Positions 24,412-40,066 of a DNA stretch of 64,000 nt are shown here, piece after piece (position 1 is the first letter of the stretch; every line of letters starts with the position of its first letter). Below the pieces are notes generated by a model, which worked only from the letters and a program-made list of their open reading frames with translations, did no database searches and had not been told where the DNA came from. The translations under genes were made by a program, and so were the position numbers. The DNA lies in the IMG/VR virus record IMGVR_UViG_3300019776_000324, positions 248,001 through 312,000 of that record; one strand, given 5' to 3'.

Positions 24412-24849
24412 ATGTCCGACACTGTACAGATATCCTGTAAAATCAACACCTCTGATGCGTCAGCACGACTGGGCTTGGAAATTCTAATAGACAACAATGT
24501 AATATTTGATTCTGACCATATTAAAGAAGAAATTGATTTTAGTTACGATTTAAATGATGACGAAGGCGAGCATTTATTAAATTTCGTTTTGAAAAATAAA
24601 ACTGCAACAGACACAGTAGTTGACGCAGACGGAAATATTCTTAAAGATGCCAGATTAATTATTTCAGACTTGGCATTTGATGGAATTAAATTAAATCAAA
24701 TTTTCATTGATCGAGCTGTATATGTTCACAATTATAATAATTCCGGAGACACTATACTGGACAAATTCTATGGTGAAATGGGTTGTAACGGCTCAGTAAA
24801 CCTGGAATTTACCACACCCATATACCTGTGGCTCTTAGAGAACATGTAA
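24412..24849 (+). CDS. Hypothetical protein
   Basis: 145-aa ORF. Confidence 0.65.
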   Translation: MSDTVQISCKINTSDASARLGLEILIDNNVIFDSDHIKEEIDFSYDLNDDEGEHLLNFVLKNKTATDTVVDADGNILKDARLIISDLAFDGIKLNQIFIDRAVYVHNYNNSGDTILDKFYGEMGCNGSVNLEFTTPIYLWLLENM

Positions 24850-24865
24850 CCATAAATATTAGATT

Positions 24866-25624: not shown

Positions 25625-25674
25625 CCACACCTGTTATACTCTATTAAATATCAGACACTTTAATAGAGGAAACC

Positions 25675-26583
25675 ATGGCTGAAAACCAAGCAACACCAAC
25701 AACACAAACACCAGGCAGTAATGTAAATGATGTAACTGAGCAACCACAGCCAGGGCAACAACAAATCCAAGTTAATATTGATTATTTAAAAACTACCCGT
25801 GTGCATATTTGTATGCCGTGTTATGGTGGTATGTTAACAGAATCCTGTTTTATGAGTTACATTAAATGGGCCAATATTTGCCGTCAAATTGGCATTGATT
25901 GGACAATGGAAACAATGACTAATGAAAGTTTAATTAGTCGTGCTAGAAATACATTAACAGCTAAATTCCTACACAATAAAGAATCTACTCATTTGATGTT
26001 TATTGATGCTGACATTGGCTGGGAGCCATGGCACCTGTTGGTAATGTTAAATCGCGATGTGGATGTTATTGGCGGTTTATACCCAATGAAATCATTACCA
26101 GTTAAATGGTGTGTAAATGGCTTTGAAGGCGCTGAAGAAGGCCCAGATGGCCTGCAAGAAGTAAGCAAAACAGGCACAGGCTTTATGCTGATCAAGCGTG
26201 GAGTATTTGAGAAATTAGATGCGCACCCTGCTACCAAACCATTTATGAATGATATCGGCTTGCCTGCAGAATTAAACCCTTACATGAAAACATACTTTGA
26301 CACAGCAGTTCGTGAGAACCGTTACTATTCAGAGGACTGGACATTCTGTGAAAACTGGCGTGACTTAGGCGGTAAAGTTTGGGTAGACAAGCGTGTGTTG
26401 CTCAAGCACACAGGAACTTATGTGTTTGATTATGCAGCTCAAGATCAACTGTATAAAGATCTACACAGTTTAGCCCTGACCAATAACACAGCTCTTGGCG
26501 GTCCTGTTGGCACAGCAGCACCAGTTGATGCTCCTAAACCTGCAGAAGCTAAAGTATTGGCCAGCAAAAAGAAAAAGAAATAA
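25675..26583 (+). CDS. GT-A fold glycosyltransferase-like protein
   Basis: ESLISRARN, THLMFIDADI (DxD), GTGFMLIKR.VFE, YSEDWTFC. Confidence 0.8.
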   Translation: MAENQATPTTQTPGSNVNDVTEQPQPGQQQIQVNIDYLKTTRVHICMPCYGGMLTESCFMSYIKWANICRQIGIDWTMETMTNESLISRARNTLTAKFLHNKESTHLMFIDADIGWEPWHLLVMLNRDVDVIGGLYPMKSLPVKWCVNGFEGAEEGPDGLQEVSKTGTGFMLIKRGVFEKLDAHPATKPFMNDIGLPAELNPYMKTYFDTAVRENRYYSEDWTFCENWRDLGGKVWVDKRVLLKHTGTYVFDYAAQDQLYKDLHSLALTNNTALGGPVGTAAPVDAPKPAEAKVLASKKKKK

Positions 26584-26605
26584 ACATAATAACCCTGTAT
26601 AACAC

Positions 26606-26633
26606 GAGCCGCTTTGATAGCGGCTTTTGTTTT
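26606..26633 (+). terminator. Intrinsic terminator
   Basis: GAGCCGCT-TTGAT-AGCGGCTT followed by TTGTTTT. Confidence 0.75.
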
Positions 26634-26649
26634 ACAAATAAATACATCT

Positions 26650-29600
26650 ATGAACATTCTTGAATTAGATTCCTATAATCTTGCTGACGCAGTTAAATTT
26701 AATAAAACATTAAATCCTAAAATCTGGGCTGGCGAAACAATGCGCCCCGAAGTTAGAGAAAAGCTATTAGCTATTGCTGAGGATTTTAAAGAATTTCTAG
26801 GCTTAAGTGACATTGAAGTCAAAGACATTACAGTGTCTGGCAGTAATGCCAACTACAGCTATACACCATACAGTGATATTGACTTGCATTTGGTAGTTGA
26901 TATTCCCCGTGCAGACAATGATGAAGTTTATCGTGAATTGTTTGATGCTAAAAAATATCAATACAACGATTTACATGATTACAAAATTGGCGGTTACGAT
27001 GTTGAGTTGTATGTAGAAAACGCAAACGAACCTCCTGTTTCTAAAGGTGTATACTCTATATTAAACAGCGACTGGATAAATATTCCTCGCAAGATTCGCA
27101 GTGAAGTCAACGACAATGCAGTTCGTAGCAAGTACGAAGATCTAAAACACCGTATTGACAATGCCATTGCTAGTGATGATTCTCAAGTGATTGATCGCTT
27201 GGCCAAGAAAATTAAAGATCTGCGTCAAGCAGGACTAGATGCACATGGCGAACTAGGAGCAGAAAATCTTGCTTATAAAATGTTACGCACACAGGGCAAG
27301 ATTAAAGAATTATACGATGCTCGTAATGCAGCCAAAGATCAAGAATTAAGTTTAAAAGAACGAGCACCAAAAGAAAAATTCACTTATGGATTTAAAGAAG
27401 ATGTTGGTATGAGCTGGGACGGAGTTAGTCCTACAACCAAAATGTTCTTGAGTGAAGAACCACCCGAACTCACAGACGAAGAAGTACTACGAGATTTTAT
27501 TAAATTCTGCGTTCAAGAATTAAAAATTGAAGCATTACCCAAAGTCAAGTTGCGCAGAGATCCACAGTGGAGTGTGCGTAACAAAACATTTGGTCGTTAT
27601 ATCAACGACATTCATACCTTGGAAGTGGCATTTGGTCAACGACACATCATGGATGTGCTCCGTACAGTGGCACACGAATTAACACACAAACATCAACACG
27701 AGCGTGACGGTGCCAAGATGGGTGCAGATGCAGGTGAAACTGGCAGTCCATGGGAAAATGAAGCCAATGCCCGTGCTGGTATTCTAATGCGTGACTATGG
27801 TCGACTACATCCAGAATTGTTTGATAGTAGCCAAACTGAATTGGGCGAAAGTGCCAGCGGTTATATTCCTACTAAGAAACAGGCCAACGATCCTCGTTTC
27901 AAAATGGCACTTACCAAAGATATTCGTCCGGGACAACTAGGCAAAGAAGCAAACAAATTAAAATTAAAGACAGACAGTCAGGGTCATCCACAAATAGCTA
28001 ACCCAAATGGCCTGTTTGAAAAACTAGCATTAGAATTAAATCAGTTCAAGCGCCGTGGTACTGTATTAGAGTCTGAGCAGTTGGATGAAGTTAGTATGCG
28101 TCCCAGCAGTCTTAAACAGTTTGCCAACAGCGAAGAAGCCAAGGGCATACAAGCTGGCTTTGAAGCAGAATTAATTTTCCGTGACACTACCAGCGATGAA
28201 AATGATGGCGAGGACATGGAACCTGACTATGACATGGACGAGCGTTGCCGTAGCATTAGTCAAGTTGTAGAGTTTTTCCAAGATGACGAATACGGATACG
28301 GATTAACTGAGCGTCAAGCTTCACGCTTACAAGACAGCTTGGACGAACAGTACATGGAGTGGTCAGACGAGCAAATGTACGACGCCTGGCGCGATGAGCG
28401 TGATGAATTGATTAAAGATGCGTGGTTGCGTGAAAAATCAATGGACGAGCGCATTCATGCTGCCCTAGTAGACGGATTAGATTTAACAGATGCGCAAGCC
28501 GATGCTGTTGTTAAACTGCACGATGATCGTGCCAGTGGCAAAATCAAAGGCAGTGAAATGAGCGATGAGCAGTTGGAGATGGCCAGCCAGTACAGCGAAG
28601 CTGTTTCCATTGCTGAAGATATTTTACAAGAAGATGTTGAACAAACCATAGAAAAAGAAGATGGTTTCTATGATGAAGTCTTAGATGATTTCCGCAGTAA
28701 TTTTTATGTTGATGATGATTCGGGCTTTTTTGATGATGTTGGCCTGCGCTGGATGAGTGATGTTGCTAACTCATATGACTTGGGTTGGCCTTATCTAACT
28801 GGCGGTGGCGGCAATGATGGCTCACGCAGTTGGGAAGAAATTGGCGATAGTTTACAACAAGCTGTTGATATGCCGGTTAAAGTAAGTAGCGGATATCACA
28901 GTGCTACACGCAAACCAGGTTTGTGGATTGTAGAACCAGACTCTAGTTTAGAACCAGATGATCGTGAAGATTATGGTTTAGAAATTGTAAGCCCTCCTAT
29001 GCCGTTGGAGCAGGCTTTAGAAAAATTAAAACAAGTTGCTGACTGGGCCAACCGCGAGGGTGATGCTTATACCAACAGTTCAACTGGCTTACATATGGGC
29101 GTAAGTGTACCTTACAAAGGTGGTGATGTTGACTACTTAAAGTTGATCCTGTTCCTAGGCGATGAGTATGTGTTAAAATCATTTGGTCGTCAAGCCAACA
29201 CCTATACCAAGAGTGCAATGAGCAAGTTTAAAGAAAACATCAAAGGTGGCCGTACTGATCCAATGAGCGTGATCAAACTCATGCAACACGGCCTGCTTGA
29301 GTTGGCACAGCGTGAAGTACAAAAAGGTGTTGGTGAAGGCAAGTATACCAGTGCTCACAAACAAAACAAATATATTGAATTCCGTAGTGCCGGAGGAGAT
29401 TGGTTAGCAGGTACCAATCCAATGCTAGGCGAAGCTGATGATGGATTTGTCGCTGGTAGTATGGACAAATTACAAAACACCATGATGCGCTATGCCTATG
29501 CCATGTATCTGGCAAGTCGTCCAGATCTTGAGCGCAGAGAATATGCTAAAAAGTTATACAAGCTAATTGCTCCCGAAGGCGATAGTCAACTGGCCCTGTT

Positions 29601-30849
29601 TAGTCAGTATGCTGCAGGCGAGCTCACAGCTGAGCAACTCAAAAAGCAATGGGCCGAAAAGACCATTGGCAAAGAAAAGAAAATGAACCAGCGTTGGAAA
29701 CTGTTCCAATTTGATAAAGTTGCTGACCAATGGTTGCCTGTCCCGGGTGCTGAGTGGAACGGTTACACTGAAGATCAAGTTAAAAATGCAGTATGGAGCA
29801 AGTATGGTCGCGAAGCATTAGACTCAGGTGAGTATGAATTACGCAACATGAGTGAAGATCAACAGTGGGAAGTCTACGATGTCAACACCGGTGATGTTCT
29901 TGAAATTGTTAAAGGCAAGAACAAAGGCGAAGTTGCTGACAAAGTGTACGACAAGTATAAGGATCAAGGAATAGGATTCAATGTTCGTCCGTATGAGGAT
30001 CCAACTACATTGACTCCTCGTGCCAAGTTAGCCAAGCGTATCGCTCAACCCAAGCAAGAACCTGACCAGACTGTAGATATGACGCCCGGTAATTGGGAAT
30101 TTTTCTACGAACCAACTGGACGAGTACTTGACGCAGTCTCTGGCGTTAGCACAACTCAAGCTAGAGCTGTGCTGGCTGATGTTCAACGCCGTTATAATGA
30201 TTTGGCCGCACCTAGTATTAAGATGCGTAAAACTGGTGAAGCCGCACCGGATGTAGCACAAAACTTTAGTCAAAATCCTAACCCAACAGCACCTATAGCC
30301 AATCAAGTGCGTATGCCTAACGGTGTGCCTGTTTGGGAATTGTTTGATATTGATACTGGCAGTGCCTTACATGCTATTGCTGATCATACTGGTCGCGAAG
30401 CATATACTCAAGGCATGGCATGGTTGCGCTCAGTTGGTGCTGAAAATCCAGAAACATACGGCGAGCGTTTTGCTATTCGTCCCAAGCGTTTACAACCAGG
30501 AGAACAAAATTTATCAGCTCCGCAAGATGCTACACAACGAGTAGGATCCTGGAGCATATATGATGTTACCTTAGGAAGAGAAATCAGTAGAATGGACGAT
30601 GTTTCGTTCGCACAGGCTGATGCTCGTGCTAATGAATTAGAGCGTAGCACTGGACATAACATGTCAGTTAGAGGTTTATCTGAGAACTTTGCCGATGGCA
30701 AGGGTCCCGGTCGCCCAGGAGATAGTCAGCGTCACGGAATACCTAAAGGTGCTACTATAGCTGAGTTAGAAAAAGCAGCTAAAGCACCAGGTCGTAAAGG
30801 ACAATTGGCCCGTTGGCAGTTAAATATGCGTAGAGGAAAGAAAAAATGA
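26650..30849 (+). CDS. Polyvalent protein: Pol-beta-type nucleotidyltransferase + HExxH metallopeptidase + putative amidoligase + small modules
   Basis: GSNA..SDIDLH; VAHELTH..E.EANA; GFEAE..EPDSSL..GLEIVSPP..STGLH..IEFRS. Start MNILE 5 nt after TAAATA. Confidence 0.8.
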   Translation: MNILELDSYNLADAVKFNKTLNPKIWAGETMRPEVREKLLAIAEDFKEFLGLSDIEVKDITVSGSNANYSYTPYSDIDLHLVVDIPRADNDEVYRELFDAKKYQYNDLHDYKIGGYDVELYVENANEPPVSKGVYSILNSDWINIPRKIRSEVNDNAVRSKYEDLKHRIDNAIASDDSQVIDRLAKKIKDLRQAGLDAHGELGAENLAYKMLRTQGKIKELYDARNAAKDQELSLKERAPKEKFTYGFKEDVGMSWDGVSPTTKMFLSEEPPELTDEEVLRDFIKFCVQELKIEALPKVKLRRDPQWSVRNKTFGRYINDIHTLEVAFGQRHIMDVLRTVAHELTHKHQHERDGAKMGADAGETGSPWENEANARAGILMRDYGRLHPELFDSSQTELGESASGYIPTKKQANDPRFKMALTKDIRPGQLGKEANKLKLKTDSQGHPQIANPNGLFEKLALELNQFKRRGTVLESEQLDEVSMRPSSLKQFANSEEAKGIQAGFEAELIFRDTTSDENDGEDMEPDYDMDERCRSISQVVEFFQDDEYGYGLTERQASRLQDSLDEQYMEWSDEQMYDAWRDERDELIKDAWLREKSMDERIHAALVDGLDLTDAQADAVVKLHDDRASGKIKGSEMSDEQLEMASQYSEAVSIAEDILQEDVEQTIEKEDGFYDEVLDDFRSNFYVDDDSGFFDDVGLRWMSDVANSYDLGWPYLTGGGGNDGSRSWEEIGDSLQQAVDMPVKVSSGYHSATRKPGLWIVEPDSSLEPDDREDYGLEIVSPPMPLEQALEKLKQVADWANREGDAYTNSSTGLHMGVSVPYKGGDVDYLKLILFLGDEYVLKSFGRQANTYTKSAMSKFKENIKGGRTDPMSVIKLMQHGLLELAQREVQKGVGEGKYTSAHKQNKYIEFRSAGGDWLAGTNPMLGEADDGFVAGSMDKLQNTMMRYAYAMYLASRPDLERREYAKKLYKLIAPEGDSQLALFSQYAAGELTAEQLKKQWAEKTIGKEKKMNQRWKLFQFDKVADQWLPVPGAEWNGYTEDQVKNAVWSKYGREALDSGEYELRNMSEDQQWEVYDVNTGDVLEIVKGKNKGEVADKVYDKYKDQGIGFNVRPYEDPTTLTPRAKLAKRIAQPKQEPDQTVDMTPGNWEFFYEPTGRVLDAVSGVSTTQARAVLADVQRRYNDLAAPSIKMRKTGEAAPDVAQNFSQNPNPTAPIANQVRMPNGVPVWELFDIDTGSALHAIADHTGREAYTQGMAWLRSVGAENPETYGERFAIRPKRLQPGEQNLSAPQDATQRVGSWSIYDVTLGREISRMDDVSFAQADARANELERSTGHNMSVRGLSENFADGKGPGRPGDSQRHGIPKGATIAELEKAAKAPGRKGQLARWQLNMRRGKKK

Positions 30850-31397
30850 GAGCTAGTGATTTTATAACAGAAGCAGTTAAACAACGCTTGGATCCCAAGT
30901 GCTGGAAGGGCAAGCACAAAGAAGGCACCAAAGTAAAAGGTGGTGTTAGAGTTAACAACTGTGTGCCCAACGAAAGTGTTGAACTAGATGAAGAATTTGA
31001 TCTTATCGAAAGCATTATTGAAACACTAGCTGAACGCAATCAAGTTGATGCTGAAGCTATCTGGGAAGATCTAGAGTCATTAACTGATGATGAGCTGTAT
31101 GTGTTTGCTACTACAACTCCAGTCATGGAAGATTGGCAAAAAGTCAATAAGAAGGACAAAACAGATGGCATGAGTACAAAAGCTGTTAAGGCCTATCGTC
31201 GTGAACATCCTGGTTCAAAGTTAAAGACTGCTGTGACTACCAAGCCCAGCAAGTTAAAGAAGGGTAGTAAAGCCAGCAAGCGTCGTAAGAGTTATTGCTC
31301 ACGCTCAAAGGGTCAAATGAAAATGCACAACATCAGCTGTGCGAAAACTCCAGATAAAGCTATCTGCAAAGCCCGCCGTCGTTGGAACTGTGAATGA
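30846..31397 (+). CDS. Putative head-internal protein with basic Cys-containing modules
   Basis: MRASDFITEA leader; CWKG..NCVP and RRKSYC.RS.GQ..ICKARRRWNC. Confidence 0.65.
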   Translation: MRASDFITEAVKQRLDPKCWKGKHKEGTKVKGGVRVNNCVPNESVELDEEFDLIESIIETLAERNQVDAEAIWEDLESLTDDELYVFATTTPVMEDWQKVNKKDKTDGMSTKAVKAYRREHPGSKLKTAVTTKPSKLKKGSKASKRRKSYCSRSKGQMKMHNISCAKTPDKAICKARRRWNCE

Positions 31398-33385
31398 GAT
31401 TTAAGGAATTTGTCACAGAATACAGCCAGCTAAAAACACAGCGGGCTCATCGTGATGGCTTAGATCTTGAGGTTCGTAGTAATGATGAAAATGTAAGCAT
31501 CTATGCTTATGCCAATGGTAAAGAACTTGCCCATGTGCATTTTGATCGAGTTGGTAACAATATTCTACCATATGATTTAGAAGTGGGCGAACACTATCGC
31601 GGTCAAGGTATTGCTAGTGTAATGTATGATTATGCCAAAGAGTTAGGCTATACAATAAAACGCAGTAGCGAGCAAACAGATGCAGGTCGTGCATTCTGGA
31701 ATAAGAATCGCGGTGAAGAAGGAAACATTTGGGAAGATAAAACACTAGATCCTGAGATCTATGGTGAGATGCTTCCCACCTCCACAGTCAAGCGCATTGT
31801 TACCAGTGTAATGAAACAAGTAGATCCTACAGCTAAAGTCACAGTTAAACAAAGTCCAGAAGGTTACTATAATGTTAATAGTGACAAACTTAGATTAGAC
31901 TTTGGTATCACTGCTGATGGTGGCGAGATCAATGCCAACATTGTTAATGCTTATAGTAGTTACAAGGGTGCTGGTGTTGTTACTAACATATTTGCTCAAT
32001 GCTTTAAGGCCGCAGAACAACTATGGGGCAAGCCCGCTAAGTTTGTTATGAGTGCTCACGAAGATCGTGGACACGGAGTATGGCAACACATAGCACAGAA
32101 ACTAGGTGCTGAGTGGCAAGGTAGCATAAGTGAAATAGCCCGCATACCAAATGATTACTATTCTGGAGGTAAAGAATCGTTACCCATTAACCCATCTGCT
32201 AGAAAATCCCAAATAAAACCGTTACCAGGTGGCAGTGGATTTGGATATTATACTCGCGAAGCGCCTGGTAGTATCATTATTTACATTGTGGATCCTAACA
32301 AGCCAGCTGAGCAACGAGATAATAAAAATGATATTATTGTAGCCATGTTAAGTTTAGATAAATGTCAATGGATTCCTGGTGCCTATACAGTTAATTCAGT
32401 CACTACAGACGAGGCGTATCGAGGTCGTGGACTTGGACATAGTTTGTATGGTATAGCATTATCAATCTTAGGTCTTACATTAGTTTCTGGAACCGAACAA
32501 ACATCTAGTGGTAGAAGTATGTGGAAAACAATAAGCAATTTTCCTGGAGTAGACATTAAAGGTTATACCAAAGCAACAGATAATCAAGCAAAACAACTAT
32601 TAAAACAAAATGGTGCTCAACCACTTACCGGAGACTATTGGACTTTTCCTATCAAACAAGGTAAACACGAACTTAAAAGCACCATACCGGATGTGCCAAC
32701 ATATCATACTCAATTTGCTAAAGATGTGCCGTACCACAAAATCTATAGAACTGGTCTAATTGCCAAGTGGAATCCAGGTCGAACTAATACTGTAAATGAA
32801 ATAGCCCGCATACCACAAAGCGAACTAGGTGACTGGGGAGAAGAAGGAACTATTGTTCCACCAGAACATCCAGTAGAAAAGAAGCCATTGCCTGGCGGCA
32901 GTAAGTTTACCTATGCTGTAGATAAAAACAGCCAGGGCAATCTAGAAATACTAATATTCGATGGCGAAAAGTTAGCTGCCGAATTAGACTTGTTTGAAAC
33001 AGGTGATGTGCTGAACACTTGGGGTGTAGAAACTATTGTAGTTGAACGCCCATATCGTGGACAGGGGTTGGGCAAAGCCTTATATGGTATTGCCTTAAGC
33101 ATACTAAAACTTACCATAGAAGCTGGCTCAACACAAACACGACATGGCCAACAGATGTGGTTAATGCTTAACAGTATTCCAGGAGTAGAAGTCAAAGGCT
33201 ACACTATGGTTCCTACTGCCAAGTATCAACCTAACAAGAATGATACCATTGTCAAGCAAGACAAAGACTGGACTCGTTATACATTCCCGGTTCATCCAGG
33301 AAAACAAAGTATGCGTAGTGGTCGCCCAGGTGCTGGACTTTATACTAGTCAAGCAACTATGATAGCTAAATGGACAGGTAAATGA
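31394..33385 (+). CDS. Tandem GNAT-acetyltransferase polyprotein (4 domains)
   Basis: Acetyl-CoA motif A: YRGQGIA (31595), YKGAGV (31961), YRGRGLG (32417), YRGQGLG (33053); three are followed by QT..G...W. Confidence 0.8.
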   Translation: MRFKEFVTEYSQLKTQRAHRDGLDLEVRSNDENVSIYAYANGKELAHVHFDRVGNNILPYDLEVGEHYRGQGIASVMYDYAKELGYTIKRSSEQTDAGRAFWNKNRGEEGNIWEDKTLDPEIYGEMLPTSTVKRIVTSVMKQVDPTAKVTVKQSPEGYYNVNSDKLRLDFGITADGGEINANIVNAYSSYKGAGVVTNIFAQCFKAAEQLWGKPAKFVMSAHEDRGHGVWQHIAQKLGAEWQGSISEIARIPNDYYSGGKESLPINPSARKSQIKPLPGGSGFGYYTREAPGSIIIYIVDPNKPAEQRDNKNDIIVAMLSLDKCQWIPGAYTVNSVTTDEAYRGRGLGHSLYGIALSILGLTLVSGTEQTSSGRSMWKTISNFPGVDIKGYTKATDNQAKQLLKQNGAQPLTGDYWTFPIKQGKHELKSTIPDVPTYHTQFAKDVPYHKIYRTGLIAKWNPGRTNTVNEIARIPQSELGDWGEEGTIVPPEHPVEKKPLPGGSKFTYAVDKNSQGNLEILIFDGEKLAAELDLFETGDVLNTWGVETIVVERPYRGQGLGKALYGIALSILKLTIEAGSTQTRHGQQMWLMLNSIPGVEVKGYTMVPTAKYQPNKNDTIVKQDKDWTRYTFPVHPGKQSMRSGRPGAGLYTSQATMIAKWTGK

Positions 33386-34113
33386 CAACAGTTACCGGTG
33401 GCGTAGTAACAACTGATGGTGCATATACTGTACGCACTTTTGAAACCTCTGGCACATTAACTGTGTCTGGCGGAACATTAACTGATGTGCAATACTTGTT
33501 GATTGCTGGCGGCGGTCGTGCCGCAGTTCCAACTAGTTCCTATGTGGCCGGTGGAGGTGCTGGTGGTGCTCTAACAGGCAACATTACTCTTAATGCTGGT
33601 ACATATCCTGTAGTCATAGGTGAAGCTACAATAAGTAGTGCTTTTAATGATCTTGTAACTATACCCGGCGGCACAGGAGGATTTTATGGTAATGGATTCT
33701 CAGGTGGTTCAGGTGGTGGTGGTGGAGTAATAGGTGTTACTCATATAAATTTTCAGAACTTTGTTGCTGGCAATGGCACACCCGGACAAGGACATGCAGG
33801 GGGCAATCCCTATGGTGGTGGATATCCACCATTTGGCCCAGGTGGCGGTGGTGGTGCATCAGGACCCGGTGGACAAGGCAGTGCTGACGGAGTTGGTGGT
33901 GCAGGTGGCCCAGGCTTAGCCAGCGATATAACTGGTAATACTGTTTATTATGCAGGTGGCGGTGCTGGCAAAGGACCCAAAGGTATTGGGAATAATAGCC
34001 CCGGATACGACAACTACGGAGCTGGCGGTGGTTACTCAAGCACGGTAAATAATAACTACGGAGAGTTACTATCTCCACAACCCGGAGTGTTGATTTTAAG
34101 GTACCTAACATGA
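33382..34113 (+). CDS. Glycine-rich domain protein (phage virion-associated type)
   Basis: YTV.TF..SG.L, YL.IAGGG, GGGAGG, YYAGGGAG, GV.ILRY. Confidence 0.7.
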   Translation: MTTVTGGVVTTDGAYTVRTFETSGTLTVSGGTLTDVQYLLIAGGGRAAVPTSSYVAGGGAGGALTGNITLNAGTYPVVIGEATISSAFNDLVTIPGGTGGFYGNGFSGGSGGGGGVIGVTHINFQNFVAGNGTPGQGHAGGNPYGGGYPPFGPGGGGGASGPGGQGSADGVGGAGGPGLASDITGNTVYYAGGGAGKGPKGIGNNSPGYDNYGAGGGYSSTVNNNYGELLSPQPGVLILRYLT

Positions 34114-34322
34114 GATTTCAAGAAATAGTCGAAGCTAAAAACACAAATCCTATTGTAAATTACAATTTGTGGACAGCACAGGTACAGATCAAACAACCTA
34201 ACTATGTTGGCCGTATTGATGTTACTGTAACTGCTGCCAACGCACAAGATGCTCGCTTGTTAATGAAATCACAGTATGGTGTTGAATTTTGGCAAATTGG
34301 CAGTGTTAAACAAGTAAAATGA
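34110..34322 (+). CDS. Small putative head-internal protein
   Basis: MRFQEIVEA leader; V.A.N..DAR..K.QYG. Confidence 0.6.
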   Translation: MRFQEIVEAKNTNPIVNYNLWTAQVQIKQPNYVGRIDVTVTAANAQDARLLMKSQYGVEFWQIGSVKQVK

Positions 34323-34681
34323 GACTCAAAGAATTCGAACAAAAAGGCACTGATGCTGAACATGTGCTTGCTTATGTAAACAGCATACATCACGGCTTCA
34401 ATATTCCTGATACTATTTTAAATCACCCACAATGGCGCAAGACTCGTGTGCCACTAAACAAGCTACATATTCCCGACGAAGAAGGCGAAGACCTAGAAGA
34501 TCCGTACAATCGAGTACAGTGGATTGACTATGATCAAGTTAAAAGCGTTGATCGCCAATACATTGAAACACATCCTATTGTAGTAGACACCAATGGGCAT
34601 ATTATCGACGGTAATCACCGTGCTATAGCCGCTAAACTAGGCGGCATGTTTGACATTCCGGCATACATACCCACCAAATAA
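34319..34681 (+). CDS. ParB/sulfiredoxin-like domain protein
   Basis: PIVV....IIDGNHR..AA..G...IPAY. Confidence 0.75.
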   Translation: MRLKEFEQKGTDAEHVLAYVNSIHHGFNIPDTILNHPQWRKTRVPLNKLHIPDEEGEDLEDPYNRVQWIDYDQVKSVDRQYIETHPIVVDTNGHIIDGNHRAIAAKLGGMFDIPAYIPTK

Positions 34682-34699
34682 TATACAGCTAAATACAGC

Positions 34700-34993
34700 A
34701 TGGATAAGAAATTTGTGCGAGTATTAGCTGATGTACATTGCGAATGGGAAGGCCTAGATCCTATCTATCGTTTGTATGTTAATGACGAACTATTTGCCGA
34801 GCGCACATGGACATGGGCCAGTGCTTATCTTGAAGAAAATCTACAAATTGAAGCTGAACCCGGCGAATATACTATACGCTACGAATTAGTACAGCCGCAT
34901 CTAGCTGAATTAAAAGTAGAAAATATCCGTGTTGATTTTGGACCCGGAGTTATAGAAAATAATGTACTAAGGATTACCAATGAGACTGTATGA
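34700..34993 (+). CDS. Hypothetical protein
   Basis: TAAATA 4 nt upstream; YRLYVNDELF.ERTW. Confidence 0.65.
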   Translation: MDKKFVRVLADVHCEWEGLDPIYRLYVNDELFAERTWTWASAYLEENLQIEAEPGEYTIRYELVQPHLAELKVENIRVDFGPGVIENNVLRITNETV

Positions 34994-35180
34994 ATTTGTT
35001 AACTTGACTGAAGAAGCAAGTGCTTGTAGCACCACAGCAGGCAGTATTGCTCCGGTAAGTTCACCCATTGGTGGAATGGTCGCAAGAAATGCAGGATCTT
35101 TCTTTGCTGGTAAATACACTACTGACGATGCAACGCCTAATACGCCTGCAGAGTACAAAAAGTATAAACGGAAGAAATAA
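34980..35180 (+). CDS. Small putative head-internal protein
   Basis: MRLYEFVNLTEE leader; basic C-terminus. Confidence 0.6.
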   Translation: MRLYEFVNLTEEASACSTTAGSIAPVSSPIGGMVARNAGSFFAGKYTTDDATPNTPAEYKKYKRKK

Positions 35181-35620
35181 TGTTAGCTGATTTATTAAAA
35201 ACTTACTTGGCCAGTACATTTTCGTACTATTTAAAAGCCCACATGTTCCATTGGAATGTGGAAGGTCCAGACTTTGGCGAACTACATGGTTTCTTTTCAC
35301 AAATTTATGAAGATGCGTTTGATGCAGTAGATCCTATTGCTGAATTTATCCGTACTGCAGAAGAATATGCCCCAGGAAGCCTAACCCGCTTTCATGAATT
35401 AACACAAATACAGGACCAAACCAAGGTCCCTCGTGCCCGATTAATGTTAGAAGAATTACTCGCAGATACACAGACCATGAAAGATCTAAGCAAACAAGTG
35501 TTTGATGTTTCAACCCAAGAAGGTCGTGATGATGTTGCAAACTTTGCCGCAGATAGACTAAGCCAACACGGCAAGTACATGTGGCAACTTAAGAGTTATT
35601 TGAAAGACGCTAGGGCATGA
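35180..35620 (+). CDS. dps: Dps family ferritin-like DNA-protection protein
   Basis: K.H.FHWNVEG..F.ELH..F..IYE.....D.IAE; H.KY.WQL. Confidence 0.92.
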   Translation: MLADLLKTYLASTFSYYLKAHMFHWNVEGPDFGELHGFFSQIYEDAFDAVDPIAEFIRTAEEYAPGSLTRFHELTQIQDQTKVPRARLMLEELLADTQTMKDLSKQVFDVSTQEGRDDVANFAADRLSQHGKYMWQLKSYLKDARA

Positions 35621-35623
35621 TCA

Positions 35624-36244
35624 ATGCAAGACCATAACGATATATACTCCATTGTAGAACGCCTCCGTATGTTGGAGGAAGGTCTTGACAAGAATCAAAA
35701 GAGTGTCAATCAACTCAGTGCCACATTTAAACCAAAAACAGTAGCAGTACTCACAGCCAAAACAGATCCTAAAAATCCTCTAGCCGGCAAGCTGGTTGGT
35801 GGCGCAGAAGAAAGCGTAGAGTCCGACGAAGAGCCATTGGAAGAAGCTATTACTAGCGAAGATGTGCTGGACAAAGTTAAAAAATCATTTGCTGATTATC
35901 TAAGTAATATAGCAGATGAAATCAAACAAGATTCCGATCTCAAAGACAAGAAAAAAGAAGATACTGATCTAAAGCAAAAAGAAAAGAAGGATCGTGATCT
36001 TGTTTCTAAACAAATCGATGAACATGGTACTAATCTTCCAGAAGCAGTCAAATGTGTCACTATGGAAGATGGTCGCGTTTGTGAAATACACGGCGATGAC
36101 AACTCTGGGTTTGAGATCCACCACGGTAACCGTAGTTTACCAACAAGATTTAAAGATTTAGCTGAAGCCGAAATGGCTTTAGAAATGTTTATGAGTCGTC
36201 GTCGTAAGACTGACGAAGCACAAGATTATATTGAAGAAGCTTAA
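35624..36244 (+). CDS. Hypothetical acidic/charged protein
   Basis: 206-aa ORF ending DYIEEA. Confidence 0.65.
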   Translation: MQDHNDIYSIVERLRMLEEGLDKNQKSVNQLSATFKPKTVAVLTAKTDPKNPLAGKLVGGAEESVESDEEPLEEAITSEDVLDKVKKSFADYLSNIADEIKQDSDLKDKKKEDTDLKQKEKKDRDLVSKQIDEHGTNLPEAVKCVTMEDGRVCEIHGDDNSGFEIHHGNRSLPTRFKDLAEAEMALEMFMSRRRKTDEAQDYIEEA

Positions 36245-36256
36245 GGAAAAAAAGAA

Positions 36257-38758
36257 ATGAATTTGTTAAACCTATTTGAAGGACGCGAACCGCATCAACA
36301 AGCTATTGACAAGCTGGAACAGGCTCGTATTGATCACTTAAAAGAAAAAATGGATTACTATGCTAAACACGGCATGGTAGAACAATTCAAAAAAGCCAAA
36401 GCTGAACACGACAGTTATTTTAAAGTTCAAGATGAGTGCATGGGATATGGTAGTGTTGTTGGCGAACAAGGCATTCCTGGTTCAGTACCAACAGAAAAGA
36501 TTCCTGGCAAAGAAGACTTACTCCGAGGCAAGGGTCGTAGCTACTACGAATCAGTCGAAGAAGTTAATCCAAGTAAAAAAGTATTCAAAGACAAAGCTGG
36601 TAAACCAGTAGGAGAGATTGGTATTGATCCTGAATCAAGTCCTGGCAATAGCGAATGGTATGTATATCATTACGGCACAGGTTATAGTGTTGTTGGATTC
36701 GATAGTGCCGCAGAAGCTAAACGCGAATTAATGTATGTTCACAAGCATCCAGAAGCGGTCGAAGGGCACGAATCAACATTTGACGAAGCTGGTATTCCTG
36801 GTAATGTTCCAGTTGAAAAGATTCCAGGTAAAGAAGATTTGCTAAAGGGCAAGGGTCGTAGCTACTACGAAGCCCAAGACCAAAAAAAAAATTCTGAAGA
36901 AGTAGATAAGCTACAAACAGCTGCAAGAGAGTTTATAGAATTAATAAACGATCGCACTGGTCCTATCTATAAAGCATATTATCGTAGTTTTCCAAAAGGT
37001 TCTGCACTAGAAGCAGAACTGCGTAAACGCATTGCCGCCAAGTATGGCGTTGCAGAAAAAGAACTTGCTAACGCCGAAGCTGGCGATCGTGCTCGTCGCA
37101 TGTTTGGTAATAAACTCAATGAAGATCAAAAGTTACATGTAGGTGATCCTATCATTGTTACAGCTCCTAATGAGTTTGAAGGCAAGACTGGTGAGATTGC
37201 AGAGTTCAGCCCAAGTGGCGCATTTGTTGTTGTAAACTTATACAACCACGGTGAACACAGCATGCACCTGAGTGATGTTGAGTTTAATCAATATGCCGCA
37301 GATCAAGAAGATGAAGATGACTGGTACGACGACGGTGCAGAAGATACATTAGAAGAAGAACAAAAAGAATTCCTGTACACAGTTGAATGCGATGGCTACA
37401 ACAAAGGTAACTTTGTTAATAAAAACGACGCAATCTTTAGTGCTCAGTACATGATCTACTATGGCGAAAAAGAATATAACAAGATTGAAGTTATTGAACT
37501 TAAAACAGGTGATGTAATCTGGGAATGGCATGGCAAGAAAGCAGACAACGATGTTGCTCCTACAGAAGTAGAAGTAGGTGAAGGTTGGAGCAACAAGATG
37601 GTTGCTCAAAGAACCGGTCAAGCTCCAACACCATATTCAGTTTATATCAAAGGTAAAGAATGGAAGAGCTTTGCTGACGATGATCATGCTGAAAATGTAG
37701 CTAACAAGTTAAGAGCTAAATTCAAAGCAGAAGGTAAAGATCCTAGTGTTATTACTATTGCACCTACTGACTACGATAAAGATCTTAAAGAATTCGCACC
37801 AGGTGGCGGATATCAAGAACCACCTCCACCAGTATTAAAGAAAAAAGATCCGTTTGATGACGATGATCGTAGTATCTATCCACGCAAGATTCAACAACTA
37901 TTAACCAGTGGTGCTAAAGTAGATAGCCGTGTTCCTGGTGCTATGGGACACATTATTGCAGCTAATGGCGAAATGATTAGAATGAAGCCATTGAACAAGC
38001 CATACAGCCAAAAGAAATATGCTTGGTATATTGATCAAGAGCGTGATGATAAACTTTTATTAAAGCAAGTTGAACCTAACCATTATGTATTGTATGATCG
38101 TGATTGGTTGCCACAAGGCACAACAGAGGCTGCTAATCCAGCACAACAGGCCGCTATTGCCGTTGCTATGAAGAAGGCTGGCAAGAAACCTAAGAGTGTT
38201 GATGAAGGTATCATGGATGTTGTTAAACAAACATTCAACGACAATGTAGTAGGTTGGCCAATGGGCACTTCTACTGAACAGTTTATACAAGGTTGGGCTA
38301 GAGATATTAAAAATCGCACAGGAAAAAATGTTCCAGTAGAAAAGTTAACACAGTTGTACAATAACTATGTTAAGCGTTCTGGTGAACTTATGCAATCACA
38401 TGGCACCACTAACGAAGCTGAAACAGATTATTCTAAGCGTCGCCAGCGTGAGCGTGATGTAGATGCAGGTAAGCCCGTAGCAAAACAGCGCCAACCCAAG
38501 ATGACTGATTATCAAAAGCGCCGTGCTCAGCAGAAGAAAGAAATGGAACTAGGCGAGGATCAAGACACTAGTGGTGTTGAGAGCGCAATTATTCGTCGTA
38601 TTATGGTAGCACACACAGACTTGTTACAACAGTTTGGCCCAGAAAAAGTCATGCAGGCCGCAGAAGAAGTTGCTTACAATGTAGGCGATGTTGACGAAAT
38701 TGGTACCAGTGATGTCAGTGCTTGGGTACACGAAGTCAAACAAATCCTTGGTGCCTAA
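36257..38758 (+). CDS. Modular polyprotein-like head protein
   Basis: MNLLNLFEG leader; many short modules separated by xxE junctions; duplicated 27-aa unit; KOW/SH3-like module LHVGDPIIV..GK.G.I. Confidence 0.65.
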   Translation: MNLLNLFEGREPHQQAIDKLEQARIDHLKEKMDYYAKHGMVEQFKKAKAEHDSYFKVQDECMGYGSVVGEQGIPGSVPTEKIPGKEDLLRGKGRSYYESVEEVNPSKKVFKDKAGKPVGEIGIDPESSPGNSEWYVYHYGTGYSVVGFDSAAEAKRELMYVHKHPEAVEGHESTFDEAGIPGNVPVEKIPGKEDLLKGKGRSYYEAQDQKKNSEEVDKLQTAAREFIELINDRTGPIYKAYYRSFPKGSALEAELRKRIAAKYGVAEKELANAEAGDRARRMFGNKLNEDQKLHVGDPIIVTAPNEFEGKTGEIAEFSPSGAFVVVNLYNHGEHSMHLSDVEFNQYAADQEDEDDWYDDGAEDTLEEEQKEFLYTVECDGYNKGNFVNKNDAIFSAQYMIYYGEKEYNKIEVIELKTGDVIWEWHGKKADNDVAPTEVEVGEGWSNKMVAQRTGQAPTPYSVYIKGKEWKSFADDDHAENVANKLRAKFKAEGKDPSVITIAPTDYDKDLKEFAPGGGYQEPPPPVLKKKDPFDDDDRSIYPRKIQQLLTSGAKVDSRVPGAMGHIIAANGEMIRMKPLNKPYSQKKYAWYIDQERDDKLLLKQVEPNHYVLYDRDWLPQGTTEAANPAQQAAIAVAMKKAGKKPKSVDEGIMDVVKQTFNDNVVGWPMGTSTEQFIQGWARDIKNRTGKNVPVEKLTQLYNNYVKRSGELMQSHGTTNEAETDYSKRRQRERDVDAGKPVAKQRQPKMTDYQKRRAQQKKEMELGEDQDTSGVESAIIRRIMVAHTDLLQQFGPEKVMQAAEEVAYNVGDVDEIGTSDVSAWVHEVKQILGA
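36470..36871 (+). repeat. Duplicated 81-nt/27-aa unit GIPG.VP.EKIPGKEDLL.GKGRSYYE
   Basis: Copies at 36470-36550 and 36791-36871; last 24 nt identical. Confidence 0.9.
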
Positions 38759-39378
38759 TGAGAGCAGAAGAGTTCACAGTTAGTCTAGACGAAAAATTAG
38801 ATGAAATTCTAGTTCGTCTCTGTGAACTTGTAGTTCAAGGTCAAAAAGAAAATCAAGACCTAGGCATGGTGGCTGCCGCTGTATTAGATCCCGATGATAA
38901 TTGTGTAACAGGTATTAACTATCCTGCACGAGATGGTAAGCGTGTTCATGCCGAGCGTGCCGCTATAAACAACTATATTGATCGTTTTGGCCCTGTTCCT
39001 CCTGGCAGTATTGTTATTACAACATTAAGTCCATGCAATCAAGATATGGATAGTCGAGCAGGAGAAAGTTGTCAAGCGTTATTAGATCAACACGGCATTG
39101 ATTCAGTTTACTGTGGTTATGTTGATCCTACACAAGATAAGCATCAAGTCGGCTTAACTGCTAATAAAAAAATACAAGCATTGTGTAAAGCATTCGCTGA
39201 CACTTTTCTTAAAGACAAACTAGACGAACTTGAATTTTTAGGTAGCCCTTGCACCAAAGACTGTTCAGGTCATCGTGCCGGATATGCATGGGCACAAAGC
39301 AAAGGCGGTCGTGTTGCTAACAGTCCATTTAGTCCTAGCTTTAATAACGGCAGTCAGCTTTATGTTGATGGTAAGTAA
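38758..39378 (+). CDS. Zn-dependent cytidine/dCMP-deaminase-fold protein with C-terminal small Cys module
   Basis: VHAERAA and TLSPC..(10)..C; start MRAEEF (TAATG coupling). Confidence 0.8.
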   Translation: MRAEEFTVSLDEKLDEILVRLCELVVQGQKENQDLGMVAAAVLDPDDNCVTGINYPARDGKRVHAERAAINNYIDRFGPVPPGSIVITTLSPCNQDMDSRAGESCQALLDQHGIDSVYCGYVDPTQDKHQVGLTANKKIQALCKAFADTFLKDKLDELEFLGSPCTKDCSGHRAGYAWAQSKGGRVANSPFSPSFNNGSQLYVDGK

Positions 39379-39383
39379 TAAAA

Positions 39384-39563
39384 ATGATTACAACTTTAAT
39401 AAAACAAAAATATTTAACAATCGTACAGACACTTGACAGGAAAGGTCCGTGGATTAAGGAAAATTTTGATCGTAAAGCATTTATTCGACAAATGGCTGAC
39501 GATCATAATACTACCACAGACATGATTGAGAAGTTACTTGAAAATTGCGAATGGTTTAAATAA
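39384..39563 (+). CDS. Small hypothetical protein, 59 aa, not in ORF track
   Basis: MITTLIKQKYL...CEWFK; fills the gap after the deaminase. Confidence 0.5.
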   Translation: MITTLIKQKYLTIVQTLDRKGPWIKENFDRKAFIRQMADDHNTTTDMIEKLLENCEWFK

Positions 39564-39564
39564 A

Positions 39565-39639
39565 ATGAACGACTATCCGATTATTCCAGAACAACAAGGT
39601 GACGAGGATTATAAACTTAATCCTTACGCACCAGTATAG
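39565..39639 (+). CDS. 24-aa peptide MNDYPIIPEQQGDEDYKLNPYAPV
   Basis: ATG 1 nt after the previous stop; ends 1 nt before the structured element. Confidence 0.4.
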   Translation: MNDYPIIPEQQGDEDYKLNPYAPV

Positions 39640-39640
39640 A

Positions 39641-39740
39641 ACACCCCTTAGGATCGTTTAGTTACGGTTTGGTGTAGGCGGCTGCTGCCTGCAAAACATT
39701 TCGGAGTCGTGCCCGATCGCGTGTTTGGCCAAGTGAGCAT
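39641..39740 (+). ncRNA. Candidate structured non-coding RNA, family not recognised
   Basis: GC-rich island in AT-rich DNA; stems ACACC/GGTGT, GGATCGT/ACGGTTT, AGGCGG/CTGCCT, AAACA/TGTTT with inner TCGG/CCGA. Confidence 0.55.
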
Positions 39741-39751
39741 TACCAAATTAC

Positions 39752-39779
39752 TTGCATTGTCTAGATAAACCTGTATAAT
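39752..39779 (+). promoter_or_regulatory. sigma70-type promoter TTGCAT-16-TATAAT
   Basis: Consensus -10; upstream of AGGAGA RBS and ATG 39806. Confidence 0.55.
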
Positions 39780-39805
39780 TAATACATTACTAACAGGAGA
39801 TTTAA

Positions 39806-40066
39806 ATGTCAGATCGCGTTTTTACATCAGAGCAAACCAACAAACTTACACAAATTATCAATGAAGGCATTAGTGTAATGTCCGAAATTGAAACACTCAC
39901 AGGCGGCCTCAACGACACAGTCAAAGCCATTGCTGAAGAATTAGAAATCAAACCAAGCATCTTGAAAAAAGCTATCAAGTTAGCACACAAAGCTGAGTTC
40001 GGTCGTGAACAACAGGATCACGAATTGCTTGAGCAAATTTTAGTACAAGTAGGAAAAACACTGTAA
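39806..40066 (+). CDS. Small helical dsDNA-binding-like protein (T4 DsbA/GapR-like)
   Basis: Helical, D..KAIAEELEIKP.IL.KAIKLAHK pattern. Confidence 0.5.
   Translation: MSDRVFTSEQTNKLTQIINEGISVMSEIETLTGGLNDTVKAIAEELEIKPSILKKAIKLAHKAEFGREQQDHELLEQILVQVGKTL

What the first reader, a model, noticed from the sequence alone, without database searches (positions are those of the whole stretch)
26650..39378. A 13-kb block of putative capsid-packaged effectors sharing a T4-CTS-like N-terminal signal
Seen: unrelated ORFs begin MNILE (26650), MRASDFITEA (30846), MRFKEFVTEY (31394), MRFQEIVEA (34110), MRLKEFE (34319), MRLYEFVNLTEE (34980), MNLLNLFEG (36257) and MRAEEFTVSLDE (38758), consensus roughly M-R-x-x-E-F-x-x-E. 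Established: T4 internal proteins use a capsid-targeting sequence (MKTYQEFIAE) removed by the gp21 protease after (I/L)-x-E and are injected with the DNA. The cargo here is enzymatic: nucleotidyltransferase, metallopeptidase, amidoligase, four GNATs, ParB-like and deaminase. Inference: a modular injected arsenal that covalently modifies host targets before phage transcription begins.
Basis: partly seen in the sequence, partly recalled or inferred. Interest (0 to 1): 0.85.

Follow-up and report, generated by a model that had tools for sequence, protein, structure and literature searches.

The report
T4-like capsid tag on phage enzymes
Six neighbouring genes of an uncultivated 344-kb T4-related phage begin with the same ten-residue tag, which closely resembles the signal phage T4 uses to load proteins into its head for injection; the phage therefore probably ships a changeable kit of enzymes into its host, but no experiment has shown this.

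Summary
The N-terminal motif is real and far beyond chance. Six ORFs (starts 30846, 31394, 34110, 34319, 34980, 38758) begin M-R-x-x-[ED]-[FI]. No other gene does in 188 kb read from the same contig. MNILE (26650) and MNLLNLFEG (36257) do not fit this consensus.

In 52 related metagenomic loci the tag heads 106 ORFs in at least 15 unrelated cargo families. All lie on the operon strand, and synonymous codons vary at the conserved residues.

A matrix built only from these leaders ranks T4 IPII, IPIII and IPI at places 1, 2 and 5 of 1,326 T4 Met-starts. A gp21-type [LIV]-x-E site follows the core in 46% of leaders, against 3% of controls.

The phage belongs to the T4 superfamily, and isolated relatives encode gp21-type proteases. 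The tag also heads the small gene after the portal gene across the clade; its PA5oct homologue was detected in virions.

The operon follows a terminator and a T4-late-type promoter motif.

Not shown: packaging, cleavage, injection, or a protease in this genome (45% unread).

Verdict: a probable new variant of the T4 capsid-targeting system.

The parts
26606..26636 (+). Terminator-like hairpin (8 bp stem, 5 GC) followed by a T-run. It closes the upstream transcription unit.
   Evidence: best terminator-like site in 24000-42200
26638..26644 (+). ATAAATA, a T4-late-promoter-like motif 12 nt before the ATG of the first gene of the operon.
   Evidence: [ACT]TAAATA lies 11-16 nt before an ATG 18 times in 275 genes (about 0.4 expected). 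It also precedes the 1656-aa and 487-aa tail-fibre-like genes.
26650..30849 (+). 1399-aa polyvalent-type protein: nucleotidyltransferase (aa 10-234), HELTH motif (aa 342-346, nt 27673-27687) and Amidoligase_2 (aa 729-818). It has no MR-type tag.
   Evidence: N-terminus is domain-internal in the Molly homologue; orthologues in L002/L003
30846..31397 (+). Tagged gene 1 (183 aa, pI 9.4): leader MRASDFITEA, a CWKG..NCVP module, an acidic linker and a C-terminal DUF6321 domain.
   Evidence: Cyanophage homologues lie between terS and terL, and one is annotated as a T4-like structural protein.
31394..33385 (+). Tagged gene 2 (663 aa): leader MRFKEFVTEY, then three repeat units each with a GNAT motif A (aa 69, 343, 555).
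33382..34113 (+). Untagged glycine-rich 243-aa protein (phrog_2295).
34110..34322 (+). Tagged gene 3 (70 aa, pI 9.5): leader MRFQEIVEAK. The family has 7 members in relatives.
34319..34681 (+). Tagged gene 4 (120 aa): leader MRLKEFEQKG plus a ParB-like nuclease domain (DGNHR motif).
   Evidence: phrog_620, E 4.9e-6; ParBc_2 in a tagged relative
34700..34993 (+). Untagged 97-aa protein preceded by CTAAATA 11 nt upstream (34689-34695).
34980..35180 (+). Tagged gene 5 (66 aa, pI 9.2): leader MRLYEFVNLTEE and a basic C-terminus KKYKRKK. This is the most widespread tagged family (27 members) and resembles T4 internal proteins in size and charge.
35180..35620 (+). Untagged Dps/ferritin-like protein, conserved in relatives.
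35624..36244 (+). Untagged conserved 206-aa acidic protein.
36257..38758 (+). 833-aa protein with no domain hit. Its N-terminal family is MNLLNLFE / MFALDLFN, loosely like T4 Alt MELITELFDE. It has two 27-aa repeats (nt 36470-36550 and 36791-36871).
38758..39378 (+). Tagged gene 6 (206 aa): leader MRAEEFTVSLDE plus a CDA-fold deaminase with a C-terminal CTKDCSGH extension. It is a second deaminase; the housekeeping dCMP deaminase lies elsewhere and is untagged.
39384..39563 (+). Last small ORF of the operon (59 aa), followed by a 242-nt intergenic gap.

Best explanation
The M-[RK]-[A/L]-x-[ED]-F-[VIL]-x-E leader is the counterpart, in this jumbo-phage clade, of the T4 capsid-targeting sequence.

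Proposed mechanism, with its status:
- The operon 26650-39563 is transcribed late from a T4-type late promoter (inferred).
- The tag docks each cargo protein onto the prohead scaffolding core (inferred).
- Where a [LIV]-x-E site follows, a gp21-type prohead protease removes the tag (inferred from the sequence motif).
- The proteins stay inside the filled head and leave with the DNA at infection (inferred by analogy with T4).

Shown here: the tag, its specificity for N-termini, its portability across unrelated cargo, its similarity to the T4 CTS, and the T4-type ancestry of the phage.

The cargo is hypervariable between relatives. It includes GNAT arrays, ParB-like nucleases, a CDA-fold deaminase, HTH proteins, DUF6321, DUF6934 and small basic proteins. 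The locus therefore behaves like the hyperplastic internal-protein loci of T-even phages, with larger and enzymatic cargo, next to a polyvalent-type protein.
For: 1. Specificity. Only six genes carry the tag among 1,718 Met-starts in 188 kb of the source contig.

2. Portability. In 52 related loci, 106 tagged ORFs lie on the operon strand, are 62-699 aa long and fall into at least 15 sequence clusters with different domains. Gene content differs among the window, L002 and L003 while the tag is kept.

3. Peptide-level selection. Synonymous codons vary at conserved residues: GAA 56 / GAG 14, TTT 59 / TTC 18, GCC 18 / GCT 17 / GCA 14.

4. Similarity to the T4 CTS. A matrix from these leaders, allowing a one-residue deletion, ranks IPII, IPIII and IPI at places 1, 2 and 5 of 1,326 T4 Met-starts. 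The best-conserved residues (E5, F6, [VIL]7, E9) align with T4 E6, F7, I8 and E10. T4 residues 4 and 7 govern targeting and 8 and 10 govern processing (PMC9026906).

5. Cleavage motif. [LIV]-x-E occupies positions 7-9 in 46% of leaders against 3% of control N-termini (P = 3e-25).

6. Ancestry. gp43, gp44 and gp41 homologues are in the contig. Phosso, Atu_ph07, RsoM2USA, PA5oct, XacN1 and RaK2 all encode gp21-type proteases.

7. Head-module link. The tag heads the 66-88-aa gene directly after the portal gene (the position of T4 gp67; phrog_13986) in many clade members. The PA5oct homologue gp333 (MKINDIITEG) is annotated as a structural protein found by ESI-MS/MS.

8. Cargo precedent. DUF6321 homologues in T4-like cyanophages lie between terS and terL, and one is annotated as a T4-like structural protein.

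9. Timing. A terminator and an ATAAATA motif precede the operon, and the same motif precedes tail-fibre-like genes.

10. Contrast. The housekeeping dCMP deaminase, next to the ribonucleotide reductase genes, has no tag.

11. Literature. Diverse T-even internal proteins share only the CTS (PMC3012670). Polyvalent proteins are predicted to be packaged and injected (PMC5512222).
Against: - There are no proteomic, N-terminal or expression data for this phage or any close relative.
- No portal, protease or capsid gene lies in contig positions 151-339 kb. The head module must be in the unread 45%.
- About 30% of leaders, including the whole deaminase family (KLD followed by Q, A, S, D, E or N), have no conserved Glu site before the folded domain.
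- The T4 match needs a one-residue gap. T4 gp61.1 and rI.-1 also score high, and I know of no evidence that they are packaged.
- The cleavage-motif enrichment is partly circular, because positions 7-9 contribute to the selecting matrix.
- RsoM2USA (one region read) and PA5oct (0-150 kb read) carry no tagged cargo, so the arsenal is confined to a sub-clade.
- In cyanophage S-P4 the segment homologous to the gene-30846 leader is internal to a longer protein.
Confidence: 0.62

Rival explanations
1. The tag is an address or recognition label for something other than the prohead core. Candidates are the phage's own Clp machinery (ClpA-like, ClpX, ClpP and ClpS are all encoded), another virion compartment, or a shared partner protein that regulates the cargo.
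For: The genome encodes ClpA-like (window 20912-23191), ClpX, ClpP and ClpS. About 30% of leaders lack a gp21-type site. No head genes lie near the block.
Against: The sequence match is specifically to the T4 CTS, including the residues that matter for targeting and processing. The tag also sits on the portal-adjacent head-module protein, which is virion-associated in PA5oct. [LIV]-x-E is enriched after the core.
Confidence: 0.12
2. The conserved 5' gene end is mainly a DNA-level homology patch that lets cargo cassettes be swapped by recombination, as described for regulatory cassettes in T4-type hyperplastic regions. The peptide itself would have no targeting role.
For: Gene content between the polyvalent gene and the Dps gene differs among the window, L002 and L003 while the 5' ends stay alike. 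Modular shuffling is documented in T4-type hyperplastic regions (PMC2839356).
Against: Synonymous codons vary freely at the conserved residues and the nucleotides upstream are not conserved, so constraint acts on the peptide. A ~27-nt degenerate patch is short for homologous recombination. This role could still coexist with targeting.
Confidence: 0.07
3. The motif is a translation-initiation feature (favourable early codons linked to ATGA stop/start coupling), or simply the first helix of homologous domains.
For: Four of the six window starts are ATGA overlaps, which force codon 2 to begin with A. AGA and AAA dominate position 2.
Against: Other ATGA-coupled genes in the window start MIT, MNV, MKK, MKQ and so on, without E-F. 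Positions 5-9 are conserved at the amino-acid level, not the codon level. The mature parts fall into at least 15 unrelated clusters. Only one internal position reaches score 11 or more; the five others at that level are block N-termini.
Confidence: 0.04

Closest known systems
T4 internal proteins IPI, IPII, IPIII and their capsid-targeting sequence (Mullaney and Black 1996; reviews PMC3012670, PMC9026906)
   Same: A ~10-residue N-terminal tag with an E-F-[IVL]-x-E core on otherwise unrelated proteins. Cargo is hypervariable between related phages. A (L/I)-x-E site follows the tag. The genes lie away from the head-gene cluster. Some cargo is small and basic (66-70 aa, pI about 9.3).
   Different: The tag is one residue shorter and uses Arg-Ala rather than Lys-Thr. 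Six to seven tagged genes are clustered in one operon. Cargo reaches 699 aa and is mostly enzymatic or multidomain (GNAT arrays, ParB-like, deaminase, HTH). Many tags lack a cleavable Glu. Nothing has been verified experimentally.
T4 Alt (packaged ADP-ribosyltransferase with terminal propeptides)
   Same: It is the precedent for a large enzyme (682 aa) loaded into a T4-type head and ejected. The 833-aa protein family starts MNLLNLFE / MFALDLFN, loosely like Alt's MELITELFDE.
   Different: No ART domain was found here, and the resemblance of the 833-aa N-terminus rests on a few residues only.
Polyvalent proteins of phages and conjugative elements (Iyer et al. 2017, PMC5512222)
   Same: ORF 26650 combines a nucleotidyltransferase, an HExxH peptidase-like region and an amidoligase in one 1399-aa chain. 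The ParB-like and GNAT domains of the tagged genes are typical of that repertoire. Those proteins are predicted to be packaged and injected.
   Different: Here most domains are split over separate genes that each carry their own address tag, instead of being fused into one giant protein. The MPTase-PolyVal model is not matched.
Ejection and inner-body proteins of phiKZ-like giant phages (SPN3US; PMC5694885, PMC10052503)
   Same: Many head-internal proteins are processed by a prohead protease after Glu and ejected into the host.
   Different: They belong to a different phage lineage. By my recollection their cleavage motif is S/A/G-x-E and they share no short N-terminal tag; neither point was checked here.

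Membership tests
T4-type CTS-bearing internal (head-packaged) proteins | A short extreme-N-terminal propeptide matching the CTS (MKTYQEFIAE / MKTFKEFTST) | tested here: met
   A leader matrix ranks T4 IPII, IPIII and IPI at places 1, 2 and 5 of 1,326 Met-starts when a one-residue gap is allowed. The logo is M-[RK]-A-x-E-F-[VIL]-x-E.
T4-type CTS-bearing internal (head-packaged) proteins | The same tag on otherwise unrelated, rapidly exchanged proteins | tested here: met
   At least 15 cargo clusters in 52 loci. Content differs among the window, L002 and L003.
T4-type CTS-bearing internal (head-packaged) proteins | The phage has a T4-type prohead core with a gp21 protease | tested here: inconclusive
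   gp43, gp44 and gp41 homologues are present. All isolated relatives have gp21 homologues. None lies in the 188 kb (55%) of the source contig that I read, and the rest could not be fetched.
T4-type CTS-bearing internal (head-packaged) proteins | gp21 cleavage site (L/I)-x-E at the end of the propeptide | tested here: inconclusive
   [LIV]-x-E occupies positions 7-9 in 46% of leaders and starts within residues 5-12 in 69%, against 3% and 16% of controls. It is absent or not conserved in about 30%, for example the deaminase family. Actual cleavage cannot be tested here.
T4-type CTS-bearing internal (head-packaged) proteins | Late expression | tested here: inconclusive
   A terminator and an ATAAATA motif lie 12 nt before the first ATG. 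The motif is positionally enriched about 44-fold and is shared with tail-fibre-like genes. There are no expression data, and no gp55 homologue was found in the part read.
T4-type CTS-bearing internal (head-packaged) proteins | Presence in virions and ejection with the DNA | not testable with these tools
   Support is indirect only. PA5oct gp333, the small tagged head-module protein, is annotated as found by ESI-MS/MS. A cyanophage DUF6321 homologue is annotated as a structural protein.
Polyvalent proteins (Iyer et al. 2017), for ORF 26650-30849 | Two or more unrelated enzymatic domains in one polypeptide of a phage or conjugative element | tested here: met
   NTP_transf_2/phrog_36119 and Amidoligase_2 are both matched, and there is an HELTH motif.
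Polyvalent proteins (Iyer et al. 2017), for ORF 26650-30849 | Zincin-like MPTase-PolyVal domain | tested here: not met
   Only a sub-threshold Peptidase_M78 hit (E 0.023, 14.9 bits against a cut-off of 22) around the HExxH motif.
MuF/Dar-type head-targeted effectors | MuF (SPP1 gp7-like) or DarA/DarB-type domains | tested here: not met
   No such Pfam, PHROG or NCBIfam hit in any block protein.

The most novel reading that the evidence does not exclude
An abundant environmental sub-clade of T4-related jumbo phages uses a short CTS-like peptide as a general address label. With it the phages load a fast-evolving, mix-and-match arsenal into the capsid for co-injection: acetyltransferase arrays, ParB-like nucleases, a deaminase, DNA-binding proteins and many unknowns, six to seven per genome. 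If so, injected phage effectors could be read directly from metagenomic sequence by their first ten residues.
Probability: 0.5. Interest if true: 0.72.

Novelty: new variant of a known kind. Interest (0 to 1): 0.6.

Why it matters
Proteins that phages inject with their DNA act before any phage gene is expressed, and they are first-line counter-defence and takeover factors. They are hard to recognise from sequence.

If this tag is a capsid-targeting signal, it is a ten-residue marker that flags more than a hundred candidate injected proteins in uncultivated jumbo phages. Many carry enzymatic domains not known as virion cargo.

It would also show that the T4 CTS mechanism is ancient and widespread in the T4 superfamily, and would offer alternative packaging tags for T4-style protein-delivery engineering.

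If it is not, the motif is still an unexplained, strongly selected N-terminal label.

Tried and rejected
1. Finding a gp21 protease in the source contig.
- A large protein search gave more than 8,000 PF03420 homologues, none with a matching contig length.
- Walking with all 12 look-ups plus one scan covered contig positions 151-339 kb and found no head gene.

2. Testing the tag against a published virion proteome. PA5oct 0-150 kb holds only gp333 as a tagged protein, so no enrichment test was possible and I stopped fetching that genome.

3. RsoM2USA. The region with the amidoligase homologue has no tagged genes.

4. The idea that the tag is an internal linker of polyvalent proteins. Only one internal position in the window proteins reaches score 11 or more, so I rejected it for this genome. 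In cyanophage S-P4, however, the segment homologous to the gene-30846 leader is internal.

5. MNILE as a leader. Rejected, because it is domain-internal in the Molly homologue.

6. Window gene 39806 as a T4 gp33 homologue. No BLASTP similarity.

7. Closer naming of the deaminase. The PDB sequence search gave only a spurious repeat match.

8. Nucleotide-level relatives among isolated phages. None found.
Full report
**What the window is.** All genes lie on the + strand. There is no nucleotide match among 50,697 isolated phage records. The DNA polymerase (42075-44732) is 50% identical to that of Sinorhizobium phage Phosso, 46% to Agrobacterium phage Atu_ph07 and 44% to CBB and GAP32. These are jumbo members of the T4 superfamily. 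The window is positions 248,001-312,000 of a 344,244-bp metagenomic contig, JGI 3300019776 Ga0197937_1108542, also held as IMGVR_UViG_3300019776_000324. An ENA assembly of the same phage (344,530 bp) is a circular permutation of it, so the genome is probably complete. T4 gp43, gp44 and gp41 homologues are present in the part I read.

**The observation.** All eight quoted N-termini are at the stated coordinates. Six share M-R-x-x-[ED]-[FI]: starts 30846, 31394, 34110, 34319, 34980 and 38758. None of the other ~70 window genes does. A position matrix built only from relatives' leaders puts exactly these six at the top of 76 window N-termini. Only one of 19,392 internal positions scores as high as 11. 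In 188 kb of the source contig, which I read by walking (positions 151-339 kb; 1,718 Met-starts), nothing outside the block exceeds 7.4, while the six score 12-23.

Two quoted leaders do not belong. MNILELD (26650) aligns with an internal segment of the nucleotidyltransferase domain in a Maribacter phage homologue. MNLLNLFEG (36257) is part of a separate N-terminal family, MFALDLFN / MNLLNLFE. Only 6 of the 13 ORFs in the operon are tagged.

**The tag in relatives.** Two syntenic contigs (L002, 228 kb; L003, 317 kb) have the same layout:
- a polyvalent-type gene;
- a variable set of tagged genes;
- the 70-aa and 66-aa tagged genes;
- a Dps-like gene, a 206-270-aa gene and an 800-1160-aa gene;
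- the tagged deaminase.

The tagged cargo between these anchors differs.

A scan with the deaminase returned 52 more loci. They hold 106 Met-starts scoring 9 or more out of 8,947, all on the operon strand, encoding proteins of 62-699 aa. With leaders removed, these proteins fall into at least 15 sequence clusters. The domains found are GNAT, ParB-like nuclease, DUF6934, DUF6321 and triple HTH, with weak RegB and LysM hits; many have no hit at all.

The logo from 87 unique leaders is:
- position 1: M;
- position 2: R 69, K 18;
- position 3: A 49, L 19, I 10;
- position 4: variable;
- position 5: E 70, D 17;
- position 6: F 77, I 10;
- position 7: V, I or L in 58;
- position 8: variable;
- position 9: E 44.

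Synonymous codons vary at the conserved residues, so the constraint acts on the peptide and not on the DNA or mRNA.

**Similarity to the T4 CTS.** From the T4 record, IPII and IPIII start MKTYQEFIAEA, IPI starts MKTFKEFTST and Alt starts MELITELFDE. I scored all 1,326 Met-starts of at least 50 codons in T4 with the jumbo-phage matrix, allowing one deleted residue. IPII and IPIII ranked 1 and 2 and IPI ranked 5. rI.-1 and gp61.1 took places 3 and 4.

The conserved E5-F6-[VIL]7-x-E9 aligns with T4 E6-F7-I8-A9-E10. In T4, residues 4 and 7 govern targeting and 8 and 10 govern processing. Asp at position 10 blocks cleavage but not targeting (PMC9026906). That review and PMC3012670 already state that T-even internal proteins are diverse and share only the CTS.

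A gp21-type [LIV]-x-E occupies positions 7-9 in 46% of leaders, against 3% of control N-termini from the same loci (P = 3e-25). This test is partly circular, because those positions feed the selecting matrix. About 30% of leaders have no such site. Across the 120 best-listed of about 1,280 deaminase homologues, M-[RK]-x-x-[DE]-F is kept but the Glu of 'LDE' is not.

**Links to the head.**
- T4 gp21 homologues are present in Phosso, Atu_ph07, RsoM2USA, PA5oct, XacN1 and RaK2.
- In many loci recovered with the protease, the 66-88-aa gene directly after the portal gene (the position of T4 gene 67; phrog_13986) starts MRLxEFYxPExD or MRYxEF. A DNA pattern for tag plus YxPExD hit at least 120 viral contigs.
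- The PA5oct homologue, gp333 (MKINDIITEGYYNP), is annotated 'structural protein, ESI-MS/MS'.
- DUF6321 homologues of gene 30846 lie between terS and terL in T4-like cyanophages. S-P4 gp060 is annotated as a T4-like structural protein.

**Timing.** A terminator-like hairpin at 26606-26626, with its T-run, is followed by ATAAATA 12 nt before the ATG of 26650. In the 188 kb read, [ACT]TAAATA occurs 93 times on both strands. Eighteen of these lie 11-16 nt before one of 275 gene starts, where about 0.4 would be expected. Ten more lie 24-30 nt upstream, including those before the 1656-aa and 487-aa tail-fibre-like genes. This matches the T4 late-promoter consensus TATAAATA, which I give from my own knowledge. 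It is suggestive of late expression, not proof.

**A useful contrast.** A canonical 139-aa dCMP deaminase sits beside the ribonucleotide reductase and glutaredoxin genes at contig position ~164 kb and starts MKQKLKLAYM, without the tag. The tagged deaminase of the block is therefore an additional enzyme.

**Cargo annotation in the window.**
- ORF 26650 (1399 aa): nucleotidyltransferase (phrog_36119, E 1e-40; NTP_transf_2), an HELTH motif with only a sub-threshold Peptidase_M78 hit, and Amidoligase_2. It fits the 'polyvalent protein' concept of packaged, injected multidomain effectors (PMC5512222), but it carries no MR tag.
- Gene 31394: three GNAT motif-A units.
- Gene 34319: ParB-like.
- Gene 35180: Dps-like, untagged.
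- Gene 36257: no domain hit.

**What I could not show.** No portal, protease or capsid gene lies in contig positions 151-339 kb. PA5oct (0-150 kb) and one RsoM2USA region have no tagged cargo, so the arsenal is a feature of a sub-clade and no proteome-based enrichment test was possible. No paper in the held library describes CTS-like tags in this jumbo clade.

**Verdict.** The best explanation, which I put at about 0.62, is a CTS-type capsid-targeting leader on a hyperplastic set of mostly enzymatic cargo proteins. That would make it a new variant of the known T4 internal-protein system. Packaging, cleavage and injection remain to be demonstrated.

Noticed in passing
T4 NC_000866: 18966-19130 (-) gp61.1; 58819-59205 (-) rI.-1: Two T4 proteins that I do not know to be head proteins have CTS-like N-termini: gp61.1 MKTFKEFIKEDM and rI.-1 MKFSDFSQSG. 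They rank 4th and 3rd with the jumbo-phage leader matrix, among the three internal proteins.
   Followed up: no
source contig 151-339 kb; in the window at 994, 15025, 23848, 24852, 26638, 34689, 46444, 58472: The late-promoter-like motif [ACT]TAAATA sits at a fixed 11-16 nt before many ATGs. Transcripts from it would have almost no 5' leader. A second class sits at 24-30 nt with a purine-rich stretch in between.
   Followed up: partly
window 19992-20047: A perfect TTGACA-17-TATAAT promoter lies before the DnaJ-like gene. Its -10 box sits inside a stem-loop (GCAGACAG..CTGTCTGC) followed by a T-run. This resembles the promoter-early stem-loop cassettes described for T4-type hyperplastic regions (PMC2839356).
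   Followed up: no
L324:3382-3801 (contig ~164.4 kb) versus window 38758-39378: The phage encodes two CDA-fold deaminases: an untagged housekeeping dCMP deaminase in the nucleotide-metabolism module, and the tagged one with a C-terminal CTKDCSGHRAGYAWA extension.
   Followed up: yes
window 20048-23191; source contig 170-200 kb (L323, L322, L265): The phage has a large chaperone, protease and translation gene set: DnaJ-like, ClpA-like, ClpX, ClpP, ClpS, GroES, GroEL, HSP20, ribosomal protein bS21, IF1-like and RF-1-like. It also encodes CsgF/CsgG, porins, OmpA and a CHASE2-guanylate cyclase.
   Followed up: no
window 35180-35620: A Dps/ferritin-like DNA-protection gene is embedded in the tagged-gene operon and conserved at the same place in relatives. 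Whether it is packaged is unknown.
   Followed up: no
window 36470-36550 and 36791-36871: Two near-identical 27-residue repeats (GIPGxVPxEKIPGKEDLLxGKGRSYYE) occur in the 833-aa protein of unknown function.
   Followed up: no
L244:2876-4465 (Synechococcus phage S-P4 gp060); L245:3443-4573 (phage B23 gp266): In T4-like cyanophages the DUF6321 domain ends a longer protein encoded between the small and large terminase genes. That protein has repeated CWKG..NC mini-modules. The segment homologous to the leader of window gene 30846 is internal there.
   Followed up: partly
L320:301-1053 (Synechococcus phage DSL-LC02): The stand-alone nucleotidyltransferase of this T4-like cyanophage starts MNLQEFVDKK, which is tag-like. 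CTS-like N-termini may therefore be more widespread in the T4 superfamily.
   Followed up: no
window 14135-15036: A 0.9-kb stretch has no + strand ORF in an otherwise tightly packed + strand genome. It holds only a 262-aa TTG-started ORF on the - strand.
   Followed up: no
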